Source: Oculina patagonica
Taxonomy: Eukaryota
Assembly (NCBI RefSeq): GCF_052425735.1
Contig: NC_135760.1
Location: 12,214,001-12,278,000, forward strand
Direction: 5' to 3'
Length of the DNA stretch: 64,000 bases
The position numbers and the translations under genes are program-made. Below, in pieces: positions 48,846 to 56,280 of the stretch (position 1 is its first letter; each line of letters begins with the position of its first letter). The notes beneath the pieces were generated by a model that was given only the letters and a program-made list of their open reading frames with translations, made no database searches and was not told where the DNA came from.

Positions 48846-50983
48846 TATCTCAGCTAAAAGCTTGGGCTCTTGACGGGTTGAGTGGATAATGGTTTGGCAA
48901 ACAGTGACCTTCACTGTTTGTCAAGCTTTGGAACTCTATTTGCTTTCTTTATTGTAGAGTAAACGTCGTCGCACTTTGCACTAAGGCTCATCACAGCTGA
49001 ACGCCAGGTAGTCGAGGTAATCATTAAGGTGATCGATTTGCAACAGTTAACGGGTTTTTTGTGTACTGTCCTAGGTAAATACAGATGTCTTTTGCTATTA
49101 ATGACTAGTACAAAGGAAATGTGATGTTCACGAAAGAAAGTTTTTTGCGGAAGATTGATGGTTTTTCCAAAACATAGTATTCTCATTGGCTGAGTTATAA
49201 TTTATAAAAAAAATCCCAGTTTAACTTTTAGACGTTTACATTGAGGAATATGAAGGAAAAATATAAAAGGTTTTATTTGAATTGCAAAGTCTATGACTTT
49301 CATGTTTTGATGGACCATTAACCTATTTGCTAACTTTAGCAGGTGTTCTTTTCAAATCATTTCTTAAAGTAAACTTCTGAGCTGTAACTATTGTAGCTAT
49401 AATTGTTCGAATATTGTTTATCAGCGCCTTTAGTCTATTCATGTTGTATAAGGGGCTTTTATGGCGATTTAACTCAATGACTTAGCGGGGAGTTGCCCAG
49501 CTACCTTCATGGGGCTTTTTATATCAAGTAACTCTAAAGTATCATCAAGGAACATGGTGTTTAATGGTGATCTTGACTCACTCGCTTACAAGATCTACGC
49601 AAAGTTATAAGGAAAAGGACAATTGCCATAACGAGTTGTAGCCAATAGTATTTCGACAACTCAAGCTTGTCTTCCGTAAGCTAAGCAAATAGAGGAAATT
49701 CTAAGGATAGTACTTTTTACGTCCTTTTAAAAAACCTAGAGCTCATTTCTTATTCGATGGCTTTGTTTTAAAAACAGGTGCAAAACACCTACACAACTAG
49801 CTTTACGATAACAGAAGGTACGGGTTTCAAAATCCACCTTTTTACCGAAAATGCCCCTAATAATGTGTATATTCCGTATTTTCTGGTTCTGAGATAATTT
49901 CTGAGTTGCTTTCCTTGGGCTTTCCTTATACTGAGTTCAGTTTTTTTTTTCCTCTCGTGACACTTCTGGGATAGGGATGATTAAGGCGGGGGGAAACGTG
50001 AATTTAATTGAAATTTTAAGAGGTGTTAAGAAGGGATTGAAAAAAAAAAAGAAATATTTTTGAACACCACCAGACAAATGACCACCACGCAAGAGCACCC
50101 CAGGTTGGGGACTGTTTTGTGTCCGTCTACTAATTTTTAATTTCAAATTCTAATTTTTTAAAATCACATTAAATATTAATACTTCTCAAATTTCTCTAAA
50201 TTTTACTAATCCTTTGAGAAAAACAATCTCCCAAAAATCCCCCAAACATGTAAAAACATGAGCATAGCGTTTTGAATGAATTGCATAAAACGAGAATGAG
50301 ATATTTGAACCGGTGGATAAACGGCCTTCTGGTGTACCCCTGCCTTAAGAAGGTGAGGCCGTATGTTAGTGTGAATACACTCTAAATTAGTCTTGCCGAT
50401 TTGCGATAATGTCGGAAAAAATTTTTTTTTTTGGTAAAAATAGTCCTTTTTTATTTTCCCTTTGGCCAAATCACCCCCAAATAAACAAAAAACTCCATCT
50501 TTTTTTTTTTTTTTGGGCAAAAAAAAAAAAAAAATTTTTTTTCCGGCCAAAAGGTATGAAAAAAATTTTAAATAAAAAAAAAATGGTTGTTATGATAGGA
50601 AATGCAATTCATAGTTTTAATATATCTTAACACGCTAACGTTGCCAATAGAATCCACGGATAATTTTCCTAGATAAGCCTTGTTATTGTTATTAAGATTG
50701 ACAACTCGCGAAAATAAACTACTCGACATTGAAACATGACCGATTTTGATTCTTACTTGCTATAGAGTTTAGTATATGTTATCGTTATTATTTTGCTGGA
50801 CACCAGCTCAAGTAAAAATACATTTAATTTTTTAATTCACAACTGTTAAGCGTCTAAATTCTCCTAGCTGTTTTTCATTCATCTTCTATAATCTCCTTGG
50901 GAGAATTTGCTTTCACGTTGTCCTTTGTACTTCGGATAGCTTTGTCAGCGGTTTACAACATTATCTTAACATCCCAGGCTGCA

Positions 50984-53900
50984 TCAGGACTTATGAGCCC
51001 GCTGTTTATGGTGGACAGCGTTATGATGAGTGGACTTCTTGTTGCCGCGCTTGGGCTTGGGTTTGGCAGTGTGTTTCGATGAAATACTGTATAACAAAGA
51101 AAAACAATAAGACAATTAAAAAATCAAACAAGTGGTTCGAATAAACAACGACGACGGGGAGACGGTGGAGCAGGAGGGAGGGCTAGGAGCAAGCCATTCT
51201 TCCCTCCCCTCCGCTTTTCGGAAAAGAAAACTTAACGATTTATTTAGGAATGACATTATTTGATGATCTCTTCAGTACTCCCCACAAAATTCGACCTTTT
51301 CAAACCCTACGCATTTTAAATCACGTTCCGCTGTCCCTGCCAGGCTAATGCTTTGTTATGTGTCGATTGTTTCGTGTTAAACAAACCTGCTTTTCTTGAA
51401 AGCAGTTCCAGGTTGCGCAGCTTGAACAGTACCAGGTGTTCCCGGGTAGCCTTGCACGGAGACCTGGGGCGTAACAACTCCCTGGAGAAACAAAAGCAGG
51501 AAGAAATTGAACAAACTTTATTCCGCCGAGGTTTCTGTTATTAAGAGGCGTGCAAAAGGCAACTCGTTCTATGTAGCCTTTAAGGGGCTATGTCACGCAA
51601 TTTCAGGCAAGTGAAATATCACAATAACGGCTTTAAACTGTAGAATAACTCAAAAGAAACTCAGAAAGACCAAAAAGGGGCATAGATTGAGCGAAATTCG
51701 AAAATATTAAAACGGATCAGTTGCGTTTGGGTAAACTTGAAAAACGTCGGCCCGACTGCTCTATACAGGGTGAGATATTAGCGTGTACGTTCCAATACTT
51801 GGTGTGCCCCTTACCTGTATCTCAACTTGACCATTTCCTGGATATGTACCAGGCGCTTCTACTGTGCTCTGAACAGTAAAGCCAACAGGTACTGCCATGG
51901 GGACTGGTGACGCTGCGGGACTGGCCCAGAGGACCTGGGCAGGACTCGATGGTAAAACAACGGAAGGGGGAACAGGGACAGGCGCAGCCGCCGGCGCCGG
52001 TGGAGGGGAGCCTAGGGCTTGAACTTGAGCAGGAGCAGGAGCTGGGGGCGAAACAGGAGGTGAAGGTGAAGAAACCTTAGGGGGCTGGGGAGGAGCTGTA
52101 TTTGGCTTGGTTGTGGCTGTATTTGGTCCATGTGTTGGAGTGGTAGGTGTTGAGGGTGATGGAGTTGTTGGACAGATCTTAGCGGCGCCAGGTGTGACTT
52201 GCTGCGTGGGTTGAACACACGGCTGGGGCTGGGCACCAGTTTGATTTTGCTTGTCCTTGACGTACTTTTCAAGCGCGTTTAAACGTTGAATCAGAAGCTT
52301 CAGTTCATTTGATTCACACTGAAAACATTCAAAAGCAAAGACAAGAGGGTCTTAGTTATTTCGAGTTTCAAACTCTTGTGCTGAGTTGCATGTAAGCTTT
52401 TATAATAAATCGATAAATCGGTCGGTCGATCAGTTATTTTATTCATAGTGATTAGCACGCTTAGCTTTCTTACAGAGATGTTATTATCTAGTTAACAGAA
52501 GCTCCTACCGCGTATGATCACATCCTGCATTCTTACGTTGATAACATTTGGGCTGAGCTGGCTAAAAACAAAATCTCCAATTTAATAATATTAAAACATA
52601 TTCACCTGTTCTTTGGTACATACTCCCGGTGCTCCTTTCAAACCCTGAATAGTAAAAATATTTTAGTCAACGATAAGCAATCACCCGGTTCTAGACCTCA
52701 CAAAAAAATACTTTGAAAAGCCGCGCTGCCAGAACATACAATAAAAGATGTAAATTAAGCCTAGTAGAAACGCCGGGGCTTTTGAGCGTCTACAAACTAG
52801 CAACAAAAACTGCACTCCCACTTAACGATTGTTCCTCGATTAAATGCGCGCGTGCAAGCACTCCTAGCTGGGTAAATATGAACGGTACGGACAACGAATG
52901 TCGTTGTTAGGAATCCTCGAAAAATGCCATTGCTGACTTTTCTTGTCTATTCAGAAACAATTCAAGCTCTTCGCAAGTTATCACGTCAGCAAGTTGCCAT
53001 AACTATCTCGTACCCAGGCGCTTATTGGGATTTTCGATCAAGCGCAAACGATTAAAAGTGCAAGGGATTAAGGAAAAGGTTAACCAGCGGAGGGAAGGAG
53101 TCTTTGCGTTTCTTTGCCCTTTCCATAATCCCTTGCTCCTCCGAAAAATCCTGCGTAGAAGAAGCGTTGCCTGGACACGACGTATTTGCCATAAGGCAAC
53201 ATCGTGTTGCTTTACAATTATTTCGACAAACGCTTCATGATCGCGGACTCGATCATATGTCGAGACACGATTCCGTCCGTGCCAGTGGAGGTACACTGTT
53301 AAACGTCTGTGTAGGCGATGTAAAGTTGTAAGACAACTGATAACTAATGGATATCTTACCGGTAGTCCTGGCGGCCCCCGCGGTCCAGGTAAACCTGGGT
53401 CACCCTGGAAAACAGAAAACAGGTTTTACCCGTTGAACAAAAATACTACAACTGAAGTTGCCTTTCCCAACGTCAGTAGAAGATAAGGAACACTTACCTG
53501 TGTGCCATTTTGTCCGCTCGATCCATCCTGTCCCTTTAACACGACTACCATGCTGTCCTAAACAAAACAAATGGACACCTCTCAAAGCATGTTAAAGTAT
53601 CAGTAAAATTAGGCTGGAGTCATGCTTTAACATGCTTGAGATTGGCGTGAACACATTTTGGCGTTCAAAAAGGGGCAGTCGGTGACACTCTTTAACTTAC
53701 TAATTTAAAGAGCCAGCGCAATTTAAGTCAGCGATGAGAAAACTCAGCTCTCGTAAGCTTGTAGTTTTTCTACTAGTCCTCTAGTGCATAGTTAGTAGAG
53801 GGAGACTATGTCTAGTGTAGCAGTTGCTTTTGTTTTTTGGGGCTAGGGGCATTGTTCCTATTGTTAATTCTATCGTTCTCTCGAAGGGTAACGAACCATT

Positions 53901-54106
53901 CATGTCAGACAAGTGACACTAGAAAATACGTTTTCAATGGAGAAATTAGTAGGTTAGCAAAATACAAATACCTCGTTCTTGGAATGAGCCAGGATGTTGA
54001 ACTTCTTAGCTGAGTGTACATCCTTCAAATGTGAATGCTTCTGGTGCCGAGCATGCTCTCTGCACGATATACCGCTGATAAGCACCAGGAGAATGGCTAG
54101 TTCCAT
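50984..54106 (-). CDS. Secreted short-collagen / coiled-coil / proline-rich protein with His-Lys-rich termini (326 aa)
   Basis: Coding exons 54106-53972, 53557-53498, 53404-53360 (a 45-nt pure Gly-X-Y exon), 52644-52606, 52318-51815, 51481-51387 and 51086-50984. All are GT-AG and in frame with no internal stop. Signal peptide MELAILLVLISGISC; 12 Gly-X-Y triplets. A 5' UTR exon donor lies at 54188. Confidence 0.85.
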
Positions 54107-56280
54107 AGCCCTAATGAATACATTAGGTTATAAAATTAAGGGAAAAGACGTTCCCTTTTCCTTTTGACCTCATTCGGGTAAACTAACCTGTTGCCGGTCC
54201 GTTGACAGTTTCACAGTTTGCTCGCCAATTTTCTCCAATAACTTATCATGAACGTGAACCACCTTAGTTTGCATTTGTTTTTTTTTTGCTTTTTTGTTCA
54301 TTAGCCGTTGTCGCCTTTACATTTATGTTTTGTAGTTGCGTTAAGATTCAATGTAATGTGGAATAGGTTCTCTCGTTCACCTCCAATTATTTATGTGAGG
54401 ATTTAAAATTCATTTGAAAAACTAGTGTTTCATTAGCAGCCATTCGAAAAAGGTTTCCTCTACAAACCAATAAGGAATAATTTATATATAAAGAATGGTT
54501 AAACTCCTGATAAAACATGAATTATTGTTTGCGATTAAAATCATTCTCATTTCGTCCTCTGCGCCTTCACTGCTACCCTTAAGCAGTAGCTGCCACGAAT
54601 CACGTGACTTTTGCCGCCACAAACAAACCGACTAGCAGGTGGTAGGCGGGTGGGATGTGGAATAGCAAAATAAAAATGGCGGAAAACTGTTACATGGAGA
54701 ACAGAGATAAAACTTGTTATCCTTTCGCTCTAACTAATAAAAAATGATTCATTTGAGGCGTGCTTGGTCTGCGGAGTAAAAACAACTTACACTACTGCAT
54801 CTTATGAAACTTTTTCGTTACTTCTACATTGTAGTTAAGATTAATTTATTTTGGATATAAACAAACAAGATTGACTAGAACTATAACGCTTATTAAGTGG
54901 AAATATTTTCAAATTCACAAAACACCAGCCTGGAGAGAGGTATAGAGAAAGCAGATTAACTTTGAAACTGGGTTTGACAGCAACACGTTTCAACCAAATA
55001 TTCCCCTGCAAAACCCTCCTCAAACAGTTACAACAATTATACATTTAGGTTGAGGTACGTTTGTCGTTTCGATTGTTACAGATTAACTTCCGGGCGTTAT
55101 ACAAAAGTTCCTCGCCACTTACCTTCCACGCATAGAGAGCAGGCGTCGACAAAAGCAGGAACAATCGGAAAAATGCAAGATAAACTTTGTTTTGATCTGT
55201 GAAGATCACTTTAGATCACTGCTAGTCACGTGAACTCATCTTCAAATAAACGGTCGATAGCCTCGTTTTGATTATTCGAGCTTGCGTTTGGTTTTTAACC
55301 CAACTTGACTCTCGAGACAAAAATAATATCATTAAAACGACGCCATTAAAAATCGTGAAAAAGTAGAGTTTCTGCGGAAGGGGCTGAAGCGAGAAATAAG
55401 AGATGCAATGTACATGAGATGATTTTTCTTGCAAATTAAGGACAATAAAAGTGGCAGACGAAATTACGCGCATTTAAAATAGTTTTAAAACCGTCTTTGC
55501 AATTTGCCTCTTAAGAATATGTAAGAAAACAATGGTAAACCACTGCGTGCAAAGTTGCAACGATGGTGTTCCTTTTAAGTGGCAAAACAAAACAAAATGA
55601 AACACAACCCGCTGTTTGTATAGATATAATTTAAAATTCGTTCGTATAGTGGAGACAAAGCACTTTAATATATTCTAAATGTGGGTATAAAACTTGGGAA
55701 GAGAAAAGGCCTAATAGAATGTCATTGTATATAATATGTAATTACGTAAAGACTAAACTAAAGACGATTTGTAAGCGGAATACTGCATTTCATTGATTAT
55801 GTACTACTGCTCGAATAAGGGCATTCTAAGAAACACGAAAATTAAATACGAAAAAGCAGTTAGAACAATGTATGAGATAGAGTAGAAAGAGAGAAGAGAA
55901 AAAGCTGCATTACTCCATGTTTCTTACAAGAAATAAAATCGTATAACAAAAAATTGGCTGATCTATAAAGCGCCCCGGATTTATGATCAAGTAAAGAGGG
56001 TTAACTCTATATGTCATGCATGAAACCAGCATACATGAAACTACATCTAGAAACGGTGACTGTCAATAATTTGAAGGACTATGTATGACTCATTTCTGTT
56101 ATAATATCTTGTCTCGCGTTTTGCCAAGCAAACACTGTTCCATAAAAGTTTGAAAATGACGAGTTAATATTCGTACGTAGAGAGGAGAGAAGTGAAAAAC
56201 TACAAGACTATAAATAAGTCAAAAGAGACGAACGAAATTAAGATAGGCCATATCCACATTTCCCCATGAAGAAGTTGTAG

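What the first reader, a model, noticed from the sequence alone, without database searches (positions are those of the whole stretch)
50984..54106. Modular secreted collagen-like protein with His/Lys-rich ends: candidate self-assembling structural material
Seen, in order: signal peptide; His/Lys-rich segment (REHARHQKHSHLKDVHSAKK); 12 Gly-X-Y triplets; CTKEQC; an amphipathic heptad (ELKLLIQRLNALEKYVK); two further Cys; a long Pro/Thr/Ser/Ala/Val-rich spacer; YPG-containing Gly/Val/Gln segments; and a basic His-rich tail (KHTAKPKPKRGNKKSTHHNAVHHKQRAHKS). Known: minicollagens have similarly short triple helices but need six-Cys CRDs, which are absent here. Collectins have collagen plus a neck but end in a lectin domain, also absent. 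Mussel byssal preCols use His-rich termini for metal and pH-dependent cross-linking. Inference: an undescribed trimeric cnidocyst, adhesive or skeletal-matrix protein cross-linked by disulfides and His-metal bonds.
Basis: partly seen in the sequence, partly recalled or inferred. Interest (0 to 1): 0.75.

Follow-up and report, generated by a model that had tools for sequence, protein, structure and literature searches.

The report
Headless coral collagen with His-rich ends
This is a real, expressed coral gene for a small secreted three-chain protein (a short collagen rope, a zipper, floppy proline-rich arms, histidine/lysine-rich ends); it belongs to an unnamed family found from stony corals and anemones to a myxozoan parasite, and its function has never been studied.

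Summary
The minus strand at 50984-54106 carries a seven-exon coding sequence of 326 aa. An optional 11-base upstream coding exon gives the 331-aa NCBI model ACROYT_G009501 of Oculina patagonica. Spliced transcript contigs from three public runs join exactly at all six predicted introns and add no further domain.

The gene is single-copy. Close orthologues occur in Acropora, Montipora, Pocillopora, Orbicella and Desmophyllum. More distant relatives occur in sea anemones, a soft coral and a myxozoan. All are uncharacterised or carry automatic names that do not fit them.

The family shares a fixed cassette:
- a dibasic-Phe motif soon after the signal peptide;
- exactly 12 Gly-X-Y triplets;
- two Cys spaced C-x4-C;
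- a three-heptad neck.

After the cassette come a variable Pro/Thr/Ser spacer, a conserved 61-aa module, a [F/I]-K-K-x-x-I motif and a basic tail. In corals and anemones histidine is confined almost entirely to the two ends.

A three-copy model of the cassette scored 0.51 against 0.01 for the best control. A lectin-like-headed paralogue with the same cassette lies about 45 kb away.

Trimerisation and novelty are supported. A skeletal role is unlikely. A stinging-capsule role and His-metal cross-linking remain untested. This scan noted the same stretch once before (s1-310726), without follow-up.

The parts
55123..55133 (-). Optional upstream coding mini-exon (ATG CGT GGA AG, followed by GT) that adds MRGRA before the main start codon
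   Evidence: A pattern scan found a single match followed by gtaagt. It reproduces the N-terminus of NCBI model P0001. The X3 and X4 contigs leave the genome at about 54110-54112, while the X1 contig runs on unspliced.
53972..54110 (-). Exon 1. Start codon at 54106, signal sequence (54062-54106), His/Lys-rich segment ending in KK (54002-54061), and the start of the FNI hairpin
   Evidence: splice joint 53556/53971 seen in three runs; AlphaFold2 helix at residues 5-19.
53498..53557 (-). Exon 2: DSMVVVLK plus Gly-X-Y triplets 1-4
   Evidence: joints at both ends in three runs; residues 52-58 lie in the modelled trimer interface.
53360..53404 (-). Exon 3: triplets 5-9 (45 bases)
52606..52644 (-). 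Exon 4: triplets 10-12, including the invariant GLKG, the first Cys of C-x4-C, and TKEQ
   Evidence: invariant columns.
52238..52318 (-). Start of exon 5: the second Cys of C-x4-C and the three-heptad neck, ending in a conserved N-Q-T sequon
   Evidence: helix 96-124 in the monomer model; contacts at the a/d positions L104, L107/I108, L111, L114, V118 in the trimer model.
51947..52237 (-). Exon 5, middle: Pro/Thr/Ser/Ala/Val-rich spacer of 97 aa, holding two lineage-specific Cys
   Evidence: Composition and low conservation (0.44). Its length varies from 74 to 117 residues between species. It is predicted disordered.
51431..51946 (-). Conserved acidic C-module of 61 aa (from SPAQVLW to GYPGTPG), encoded by the end of exon 5 (51815-51946) and the start of exon 6 (51431-51481); the span includes the intron between them
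   Evidence: Mean conservation 0.77, with no Lys or Arg; invariant W, QST, AP.T and VTPQ columns.
51387..51481 (-). Exon 6 (95 bases, ends in phase 2): the end of the C-module, a short linker and the FKKS motif
50984..51086 (-). Exon 7: basic His/Lys-rich tail and stop codon (the tail starts at 51400 in exon 6)
   Evidence: pI 12 with 12 Lys/Arg and 6 His in 38 residues; conserved pattern K.K(R/H)..KKS.HH..VHH in corals.

Best explanation
The gene encodes a secreted, disulfide-locked, parallel homotrimer built like a collectin without its head.

Proposed mechanism:
- The three-heptad neck and the C-x4-C pair next to it bring three chains into register and lock them.
- A triple helix of exactly 12 Gly-X-Y triplets then zips up towards the N-terminus.
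- From the neck hang three flexible, probably O-glycosylated, Pro/Thr/Ser-rich arms. Each ends in a small conserved acidic module and a polycationic His/Lys tail.
- A second cluster of three His/Lys-rich segments sits at the N-terminal end of the stalk.

The molecule would therefore carry basic 'stickers' at both ends, whose charge can be tuned by pH or metal ions. I propose that it binds and bridges polyanionic partners in a secreted matrix, acting as a cross-linker or adaptor and not as a fibre by itself.

What is shown: the gene, its splicing and expression, the family, the conservation of each part, and a supportive trimer model.

What is inferred: trimer formation in vivo, glycosylation, polyanion or metal binding, and the site of action. 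My preferred site is the stinging-capsule (cnidocyst) matrix, whose matrix is known to hold poly-gamma-glutamate. I put that site at only about one chance in three.
For: Gene, splicing and expression:
- establish the gene model. It is single-copy in the genome.

Cassette conservation:
- All 28 cassette-bearing proteins examined, from stony corals to Hydra and a myxozoan, have 12 triplets followed by two Cys and a Leu-rich heptad stretch. The only deviation is one Gly-to-Ser change in Xenia.
- The C-x4-C pair, the neck residues and GLKG are invariant in 17 coral sequences.

Trimer:
- The three-copy model of residues 40-130 gave ipSAE 0.51 (three runs: 0.50-0.53), against a best control of 0.01.
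- The mark was reached by 21 of 30 solved same-chain pairs and by 0 of 23 solved single chains in the tool's calibration.
- Runs agreed in at least 97% of contacts, and the partner's pLDDT was at least 73.
- Contacts run along the whole collagen part and at the heptad a/d positions.

Ends:
- His is confined to the ends in every stony coral and anemone tested (p from 1e-4 to 2e-11). The tail's pI is 12.

Arms:
- The spacer is variable in length, poorly conserved and predicted disordered.

Pointers to a capsule site:
- The family is kept in the myxozoan Thelohanellus.
- A short segment after the signal peptide ends in KK, KR or RR. A propeptide ending in Lys-Arg is described as conserved in diverse nematocyst proteins (PMC4321713).
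- A basic tail is part of the canonical layout of nematogalectins and of many minicollagens (PMC4195985).
- Poly-gamma-glutamate fills hydrozoan nematocysts (PMC4321713).
Against: - There are no protein-level data and no cell-type data. I could not link any orthologue to a published cell atlas or proteome.
- A motif search of the Ceratonova polar-capsule proteome sequences found no relative.
- The trimer score may partly reflect the model's memory of collagen helices (caveat).
- The monomer model is of very low confidence (mean pLDDT 38), so the C-module has no fold assignment.
- The dibasic motifs at both ends could mean that the basic ends are removed, which would undo the proposed mechanism.
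- The myxozoan and soft-coral relatives have weak or no His enrichment, so the His ends are a trait of the coral and anemone branch, not of the whole family.
Confidence: 0.5

Rival explanations
1. Pro-protein reading. Both His-rich ends are pro-parts cut off at the conserved dibasic motifs (KK before FNI; FKK before the tail). The mature product would be the near-neutral collagen-neck-spacer-C-module core. The released cationic His-rich peptides would serve as sorting or charge-buffering pro-parts, or as histatin-like antimicrobial peptides.
For: The [KR][KR]-F-[NDT]-[ILV] motif lies 10-25 residues after the signal sequence in nearly all relatives. In the Hydra group it stays there although the collagen part lies 220 residues further on. 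The [F/I]-K-[KR]-x-x-I motif before the tail is shared by stony corals, anemones, soft corals and an unplaced relative. A propeptide ending in Lys-Arg is described as conserved in diverse nematocyst proteins, and its removal was shown for cnidoin (PMC4321713).
Against: Stony corals and anemones have KK, not the canonical KR. The tail shows position-specific conservation beyond its composition, which fits a part kept in the mature protein. No cleavage data exist.
Confidence: 0.25
2. Soluble defence collagen. The protein would be a headless sister of the neighbouring lectin-like-headed gene, with trimeric polycationic tails that bind microbial polyanions such as lipopolysaccharide, teichoic acids or DNA, in mucus or body fluid.
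For: A paralogue with the same 12-triplet, two-Cys, neck cassette (41% identity over 73 residues) and a large Cys-rich head lies about 45 kb away on the same strand. It has a Hydra orthologue (43% identity).
Against: The head's fold is not established here, because the single-sequence model failed and there was no PDB sequence match. No evidence of immune induction exists. Retention in a myxozoan, a highly reduced parasite, fits an immune role poorly.
Confidence: 0.15
3. Skeletal organic-matrix protein secreted by calicoblasts to organise aragonite deposition (one of the first reader's options).
For: It is secreted, collagen-like and well conserved in stony corals.
Against: Relatives with the same layout, including the His-rich ends, occur in the non-calcifying anemones Actinia, Actinostola and Nematostella. 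Relatives with the core layout occur in the soft coral Xenia and a myxozoan. The ends are strongly basic, unlike the acidic proteins typical of coral skeleton matrices (my own knowledge).
Confidence: 0.05
4. A member of an already described family: minicollagen, collectin, nematogalectin, CTHRC1 or a FACIT collagen.
For: It shares single features with each: 12 triplets (minicollagens have 12-16, PMC2687796); a collagen part plus neck (collectins); a basic tail (nematogalectins); C-x4-C after the helix (FACIT collagens, my own knowledge).
Against: The defining domain of each family is absent. Pfam finds only Collagen, and the transcripts add no exon. The exhaustive profile search found only uncharacterised cnidarian proteins plus generic collagen matches.
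Confidence: 0.03

Closest known systems
Collectins (mannose-binding lectin, surfactant protein D, CL-K1)
   Same: A secreted chain with a short N-terminal segment, a collagen triple helix and an alpha-helical coiled-coil neck that sets the trimer. There is a Lys in a G-X-K-G context, which in collectins is hydroxylated and glycosylated (my own knowledge). Cys lie at the helix/neck border as in CL-K1 (my own knowledge).
   Different: No C-type lectin head and no globular domain at all. The neck is followed by a disordered Pro/Thr/Ser arm, a 61-aa conserved module and a basic His/Lys tail. No sequence homology outside the Gly-X-Y part.
Neighbouring headed paralogue (G000:C3:12313728-12320059, earlier finding s1-270990) and its Hydra orthologue LOC100214365
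   Same: The same cassette: a hydrophobic strand, LKG.DG, exactly 12 triplets, two Cys and a Leu-rich neck. Identity is 41% over 73 residues. Same contig and strand, about 45 kb apart.
   Different: The paralogue has C-x6-C (C-x9-C in Hydra) and ends in a Cys-rich globular head of about 260 aa encoded by two alternative exons. This gene has no head.
Minicollagens of nematocysts
   Same: Cnidarian-restricted, with a signal peptide plus a short pro-part, 12-16 Gly-X-Y triplets, Pro-rich flanking sequence and often a basic tail (PMC2687796; PMC4195985).
   Different: Minicollagens are defined by six-Cys domains at both ends. This protein has only the C-x4-C pair, and it has a coiled-coil neck that minicollagens lack.
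Nematogalectins
   Same: The canonical layout is a signal peptide, a conserved N-region, Gly-X-Y repeats, a further domain, and often a Lys-rich basic tail. The family is pan-cnidarian and includes Myxozoa (PMC4195985).
   Different: No SUEL/galactose-binding lectin domain. The language-model look-alike score to the collagen + SUEL cluster is only 0.81, below the level the tool treats as evidence. I did not align the two directly.
FACIT collagens, COL1-NC1 junction (types IX, XII, XIV, XIX)
   Same: Two Cys separated by four residues directly after the last triplet, forming inter-chain disulfides. The spacing in FACITs is from my own knowledge; the disulfides linking the COL1 and NC1 domains are mentioned in PMC7034273.
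   Different: A single short helix and none of the TSPN, vWA or FN3 domains. The match is a motif, not homology.
Mussel byssal preCols
   Same: A collagen core with His-rich termini in a secreted structural protein (my own knowledge).
   Different: PreCols have a far longer collagen domain and silk- or elastin-like flanks (my own knowledge). Here the helix is 36 residues, the ends are Lys/Arg-rich as well as His-rich, and they are bounded by dibasic motifs. No homology and no metal-binding data.

Membership tests
Unnamed cnidarian '12-triplet cassette' family, KKFNI / IKKxxI branch (proposed here) | A [KR][KR]-F-[NDT]-[ILV] motif 10-25 residues after the signal sequence | tested here: met
   KKFNI at residue 39 of P0001. 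Present in all full-length coral, anemone and soft-coral relatives, and in the myxozoan relative.
Unnamed cnidarian '12-triplet cassette' family, KKFNI / IKKxxI branch (proposed here) | Exactly 12 Gly-X-Y triplets followed by C-x4-C and a three-heptad neck | tested here: met
   found by the exhaustive profile search with E-values from 1e-142 to 1e-9.
Unnamed cnidarian '12-triplet cassette' family, KKFNI / IKKxxI branch (proposed here) | A [F/I/V]-K-[KR]-x-x-I motif followed by a basic tail near the C-terminus | tested here: met
   FKKSSI in this gene. Variants occur in Actinia, Nematostella, Xenia and two unplaced relatives. The motif is absent from the Thelohanellus model.
Pfam Collagen (PF01391) | Score at or above the gathering cut-off | tested here: met
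   27.8 bits against a cut-off of 27.2, residues 59-92.
Minicollagen | Six-Cys cysteine-rich domains at both ends of the collagen part | tested here: not met
   Only five Cys in the whole protein, two of them invariant.
Minicollagen | A short helix of 12-16 triplets with Pro-rich flanks | tested here: inconclusive
   12 triplets: met. The Pro-rich sequence lies on the C-terminal side only and is separated from the helix by the neck (definition from PMC2687796).
Collectin | A C-type lectin domain after the neck | tested here: not met
   No Pfam match on exon 5 or on the whole protein. The transcript holds no further exon.
Collectin | A collagen helix followed by a trimerising coiled-coil neck | tested here: met
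   Helix 96-124. In the trimer model, contacts lie at the a/d positions; score 0.51 against control 0.01.
Nematogalectin | A SUEL-type galactose-binding lectin domain (PF02140) | tested here: not met
   The genome holds 118 matches to this domain elsewhere, none in this gene.
CTHRC1 | A C-terminal CTHRC1 globular domain after 12 triplets | tested here: not met
   12 triplets: met. No globular domain is predicted.
FACIT collagens | Several collagenous domains plus a TSPN (and vWA/FN3) N-terminal part | tested here: not met
   One 36-residue helix only, and no such Pfam domains. The C-x4-C motif alone is shared.
Cnidocyst (nematocyst) structural proteins, as a functional class | Expression in developing stinging cells, or presence in capsule proteomes | not testable with these tools
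   No orthologue accession was found in any paper text or in the supplements I could read.

The most novel reading that the evidence does not exclude
The family is an overlooked, ancient component of the stinging capsule, kept even by myxozoans. On this reading its His-rich ends work as a pH- or metal-operated switch. They would stay protonated and bound to polyanions (poly-gamma-glutamate, chondroitin) while the capsule is built, and change their binding when the capsule matures or fires.
Probability: 0.2. Interest if true: 0.7.

Novelty: new variant of a known kind. Interest (0 to 1): 0.45.

Why it matters
Collagen-stalked trimers are a main way in which animals present recognition or structural modules, and cnidarians have diversified them greatly.

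This work defines a family that nobody has named. Its stalk length is frozen at 12 triplets across several hundred million years, it occurs from reef corals to a myxozoan parasite, and it comes in a headed and a headless form that sit side by side in this coral genome.

If the headless form proves to be a capsule or matrix cross-linker with pH- or metal-tunable ends, it would add a new part to the short list of conserved cnidarian matrix proteins. It would also give a compact, naturally trimerising scaffold for materials work.

If it proves ordinary, the automatic names now attached to its members still need correcting. These include 'kinase nek3', 'cuticle collagen', 'collagen XVII-like' and 'nematocyst expressed protein 3-like'.

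Tried and rejected
1. Cell type and proteome evidence.
- Accession numbers of nine orthologues were absent from all paper texts.
- They were also absent from the supplements of the Nematostella matrisome paper, two myxozoan nematocyst papers, the Actinia fragacea proteome and the Nematostella cnidocyte transcriptome. No supplements were held for an Acropora single-cell paper.
- I could not map the Nematostella orthologue to an NV2 gene number, so the 'NvCol-like' expression data cannot be used either way.
- No Stylophora orthologue was returned, which closed the route through the Stylophora cell atlas.

2. Structure.
- The AlphaFold2 monomer model had mean pLDDT 38 and is unusable for fold search, so no fold search was run.
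- A single-sequence model of the paralogue's head had pLDDT 30 and is also unusable.

3. Solved structures by sequence. Only generic collagen matches appeared for the cassette. Nothing appeared for residues 94-331 or for the paralogue's head.

4. Direct comparison with nematogalectin. The genome has 118 SUEL-lectin matches. In four candidate loci I found no run of six or more triplets within 9 kb upstream. I dropped this line; it says nothing either way.

5. ESM Atlas look-alikes. All scored below 0.9 and were generic collagens.

6. Rfam and tandem repeats. Nothing was found in the region.

7. Myxozoan gene. It is a single 537-base exon without a called signal-peptide exon or basic tail.

8. 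Rejected readings: minicollagen, collectin, CTHRC1, FACIT and nematogalectin membership (defining domains absent) and a skeletal-matrix role (relatives in non-calcifiers).
Full report
**The gene.**
Translating the minus strand of 50900-54200 in three frames shows seven open pieces that join through canonical GT..AG introns into one 981-base frame.

| Exon | Window coordinates |
|---|---|
| 1 | 54106-53972 |
| 2 | 53557-53498 |
| 3 | 53404-53360 |
| 4 | 52644-52606 |
| 5 | 52318-51815 |
| 6 | 51481-51387 |
| 7 | 51086-50984 |

- All junctions are in phase 0 except the last.
- The public protein collection holds the same model as 'hypothetical protein ACROYT_G009501 [Oculina patagonica]'. It has 331 aa. 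Its five extra N-terminal residues come from an 11-base coding mini-exon at 55123-55133.

**Expression and splicing.**
- Contigs of three public runs from three studies, guessed to be RNA, cover the exons and not most of the introns.
- They join at exactly the six predicted junctions, each with CT..AC on the plus strand.
- The 1871-base contig of run X1 equals the seven exons plus 533 bases of 3' end and about 320 bases of 5' end, so no further coding exon is spliced in.
- X1 runs unspliced through the 5' acceptor near 54110, whereas X3 and X4 leave the genome there. This fits two alternative 5' ends.
- A six-frame search of the whole assembly with exon 5 finds only this locus, so the gene is single-copy.

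**The family in stony corals.**
A word-indexed search and a profile search return about 20 clusters. Cluster look-ups name them:
- Acropora millepora, A. muricata and A. palmata;
- Montipora foliosa and M. capricornis;
- Pocillopora verrucosa, Orbicella faveolata and Desmophyllum pertusum.

All are labelled hypothetical or uncharacterized, or carry automatic names that do not fit them: 'collagen alpha-1(XVII)-like', 'cuticle collagen 2C-like', 'mucin-1-like', 'nematocyst expressed protein 3-like'.

In a 17-sequence alignment the invariant positions are:
- the 12 Gly of the triplets and the GLKG Lys;
- both Cys of C-x4-C and the neck Leu/Ile/Arg;
- a Trp and several residues of a 61-aa C-terminal module;
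- the two Lys (K-K) of the FKK motif, whose Phe is nearly invariant;
- two Lys of the tail.

Mean conservation by region:

| Region | Mean conservation |
|---|---|
| Neck | 0.80 |
| Collagen part | 0.77 |
| C-module | 0.77 |
| Tail | 0.62 |
| N-terminal segment | 0.52 |
| Spacer | 0.44 |

The spacer's length ranges from 74 to 117 residues. The two Cys after the neck are missing in Acropora, Montipora and two other lineages.

**The wider family.**
An exhaustive HMMER search of 1.84 billion representatives gave 23 hits below 1e-10. Beyond generic collagens it found single-stretch matches to proteins that cluster look-ups place in:
- Actinia tenebrosa, Actinostola and Nematostella vectensis (A7RLU8; automatically named 'kinase nek3');
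- the soft coral Xenia;
- the myxozoan Thelohanellus kitauei;
- Hydra vulgaris (LOC100214365).

Aligned and counted, all 28 cassette-bearing proteins have 12 triplets (Xenia has a Gly-to-Ser change in the first) and then two Cys. The spacing of the Cys differs by group:
- C-x4-C in anthozoans and the myxozoan;
- C-x6-C in the headed coral group;
- C-x9-C in the Hydra group;
- C-x10-C in one unplaced sequence (P0129).

A neck with conserved Arg and Leu-Glu follows.

Two further motifs mark the branch of this gene:
- [KR][KR]-F-[NDT]-[ILV] lies 10-25 residues after the signal sequence.
- [F/I/V]-K-[KR]-x-x-I lies just before the C-terminal tail.

The anemone proteins also have His-rich N-segments and long basic His-rich tails. 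In Actinia there are 16 His at the ends and none in the 320 residues between (p = 2e-11). So 'the His-rich ends are not conserved' is not met either, at least for stony corals and anemones. In soft corals and the myxozoan the enrichment is weak or absent.

**A linked headed paralogue.**
- One profile hit (P0145) combines the cassette with a Cys-rich C-terminal domain of about 260 aa. It is 43% identical to Hydra LOC100214365 over cassette plus head.
- Searching the Oculina assembly with it gives 94% identity at G000:C3:12313728-12320059 on the minus strand. That is about 45 kb from this gene, on the same contig and strand.
- There are two successive head exons. This is the locus of earlier finding s1-270990.
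- The cassettes of the two genes are 41% identical over 73 residues.
- The headless gene of this finding and a headed gene are therefore old paralogues that are still neighbours here.
- I could not establish the head's fold.

**Structure.**
- The AlphaFold2 monomer model is poor (mean pLDDT 38). It shows only the signal helix, a hairpin at 42-58 and a helix at 96-124. That is what is expected for a chain that folds only as a trimer and is otherwise disordered.
- A three-copy model of residues 40-130 scored ipSAE 0.51 (runs 0.50-0.53) against 0.01 for the best of three controls.
- The tool's mark was reached by 21 of 30 solved same-chain pairs and 0 of 23 solved single chains.
- Runs agreed in at least 97% of contacts, and the partner's pLDDT was at least 73.
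- The tool warns that a pass can come from memory of similar solved complexes.
- Contacts cover residues 52-95 and then L104, L107/I108, L111, L114/E115 and Y117/V118. This is a 3-4 heptad pattern, so the model places a triple helix continuous with a three-stranded coiled coil, with the two Cys at the junction.

**How it probably works.**
From established knowledge of collectins and of collagens with C-terminal cystine knots (my own knowledge), a neck of this kind nucleates and registers the trimer. The adjacent Cys lock it, and the helix folds from the C-terminal end towards the N-terminus. Fitting this, the Pro-rich, more stable triplets lie next to the knot and the Pro-poor ones at the far end.

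The rest of the chain would form three flexible arms:
- 97 residues with 32% Pro and 22% Ser/Thr, and a conserved N-Q-T sequon at the base;
- a conserved acidic module of unknown fold;
- a tail with pI 12.

The molecule would thus have a trivalent basic cluster at each end. The simplest function is binding and bridging polyanions, with histidine making that binding sensitive to pH or metal ions. This step is inference.

**Where it acts.**
Three points favour the stinging capsule:
- A myxozoan retains the family.
- A short pro-part ends in a dibasic pair, and a propeptide ending in Lys-Arg is described as 'conserved in diverse nematocyst proteins' (PMC4321713).
- Basic tails are part of the canonical nematogalectin layout and of many minicollagens (PMC4195985).

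The capsule matrix also offers an obvious polyanion, poly-gamma-glutamate (PMC4321713).

Against it:
- I found no relative by motif in the Ceratonova polar-capsule proteome.
- There is no expression evidence at all.

The linked lectin-like-headed paralogue gives some weight to a soluble defence role. The dibasic motifs give real weight to the rival reading that both ends are cleaved off. A skeletal role is unlikely, given the relatives in anemones, a soft coral and a myxozoan.

**Comparison with known families.**
- It works most like a collectin stalk and neck, but has no lectin head.
- It shares triplet number, Pro-rich sequence, pro-part and basic tail with minicollagens, but lacks their defining Cys-rich domains.
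- It shares the overall layout with nematogalectins, but lacks the SUEL lectin domain.
- It shares 12 triplets with CTHRC1, but lacks its globular domain.
- It shares C-x4-C with the FACIT COL1-NC1 junction as a motif only.
- Pfam recognises nothing but Collagen.

It is best filed as a new, unnamed cnidarian family: a new variant of the collagen-stalked trimer theme.

**Verdict.**
'Undescribed' and 'trimeric' hold, 'skeletal' is unlikely, and 'capsule' and 'His-metal cross-links' are open.
- Interest is moderate. The family definition, the frozen 12-triplet cassette, the myxozoan retention and the headed/headless neighbour pair are new and testable, but the function remains inferred.

Noticed in passing
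G000:C3:12313728-12320059 (about 35.7 kb beyond the window's end), loci L018-L022: A paralogue with the same 12-triplet, two-Cys, neck cassette and a Cys-rich head of about 260 aa encoded by two successive alternative exons. It lies on the same strand, about 45 kb from this gene. Hydra LOC100214365 is its orthologue (43% identity). This is the locus of earlier finding s1-270990.
   Followed up: partly
window 55123-55133 (-): An 11-base coding mini-exon with an in-frame upstream ATG. Transcript contigs show both a spliced and an unspliced 5' end, so the gene has two alternative 5' ends and possibly two start codons.
   Followed up: partly
window 51580-51760 and 53746-53960 (introns 5 and 1 of the gene): Two intronic stretches reach 100-fold or higher summed contig depth than the exons in all three contig runs. 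Many variant contigs and small indels are present, and a few poly-A reads also map there. They look like members of high-copy, transcribed repeat families. Neither has a second copy inside the window.
   Followed up: partly
protein P0020 (Acropora cluster, 155 aa): A transcript-derived protein that joins the end of exon 4 directly to exon 6, skipping the whole neck, spacer and C-module exon in frame. This is a possible minor isoform with only the helix and the basic tail. No such joint was listed for Oculina.
   Followed up: no
whole genome G000: 118 matches to the SUEL/galactose-binding lectin domain, with dense arrays on C4 near 54.5-54.7 Mb, C14 near 3.75-3.83 Mb and C2 near 43.95-44.06 Mb. 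This is a large lectin expansion.
   Followed up: no
proteins P0219/P0220, P0046, P0022, P0024: Automatic RefSeq names of the orthologues do not fit these proteins: 'probable serine/threonine-protein kinase nek3' (Nematostella), 'nematocyst expressed protein 3-like' and 'mucin-1-like' (Pocillopora), 'cuticle collagen 2C-like' (Acropora muricata) and 'collagen alpha-1(XVII) chain-like' (A. millepora).
   Followed up: yes
window 50500-50560: An odd low-complexity stretch of alternating long T and A runs about 430 bases downstream of the stop codon, within the span that the X1 contig's 533-base 3' end would cover if it is collinear with the genome. It was not examined further.
   Followed up: no
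L023 (Thelohanellus kitauei JWZT01001269.1, 4001-4537): The myxozoan relative is called as a single 537-base exon that starts inside the pro-part, with no signal peptide, and ends without a basic tail. The model is probably incomplete at the 5' end.
   Followed up: no
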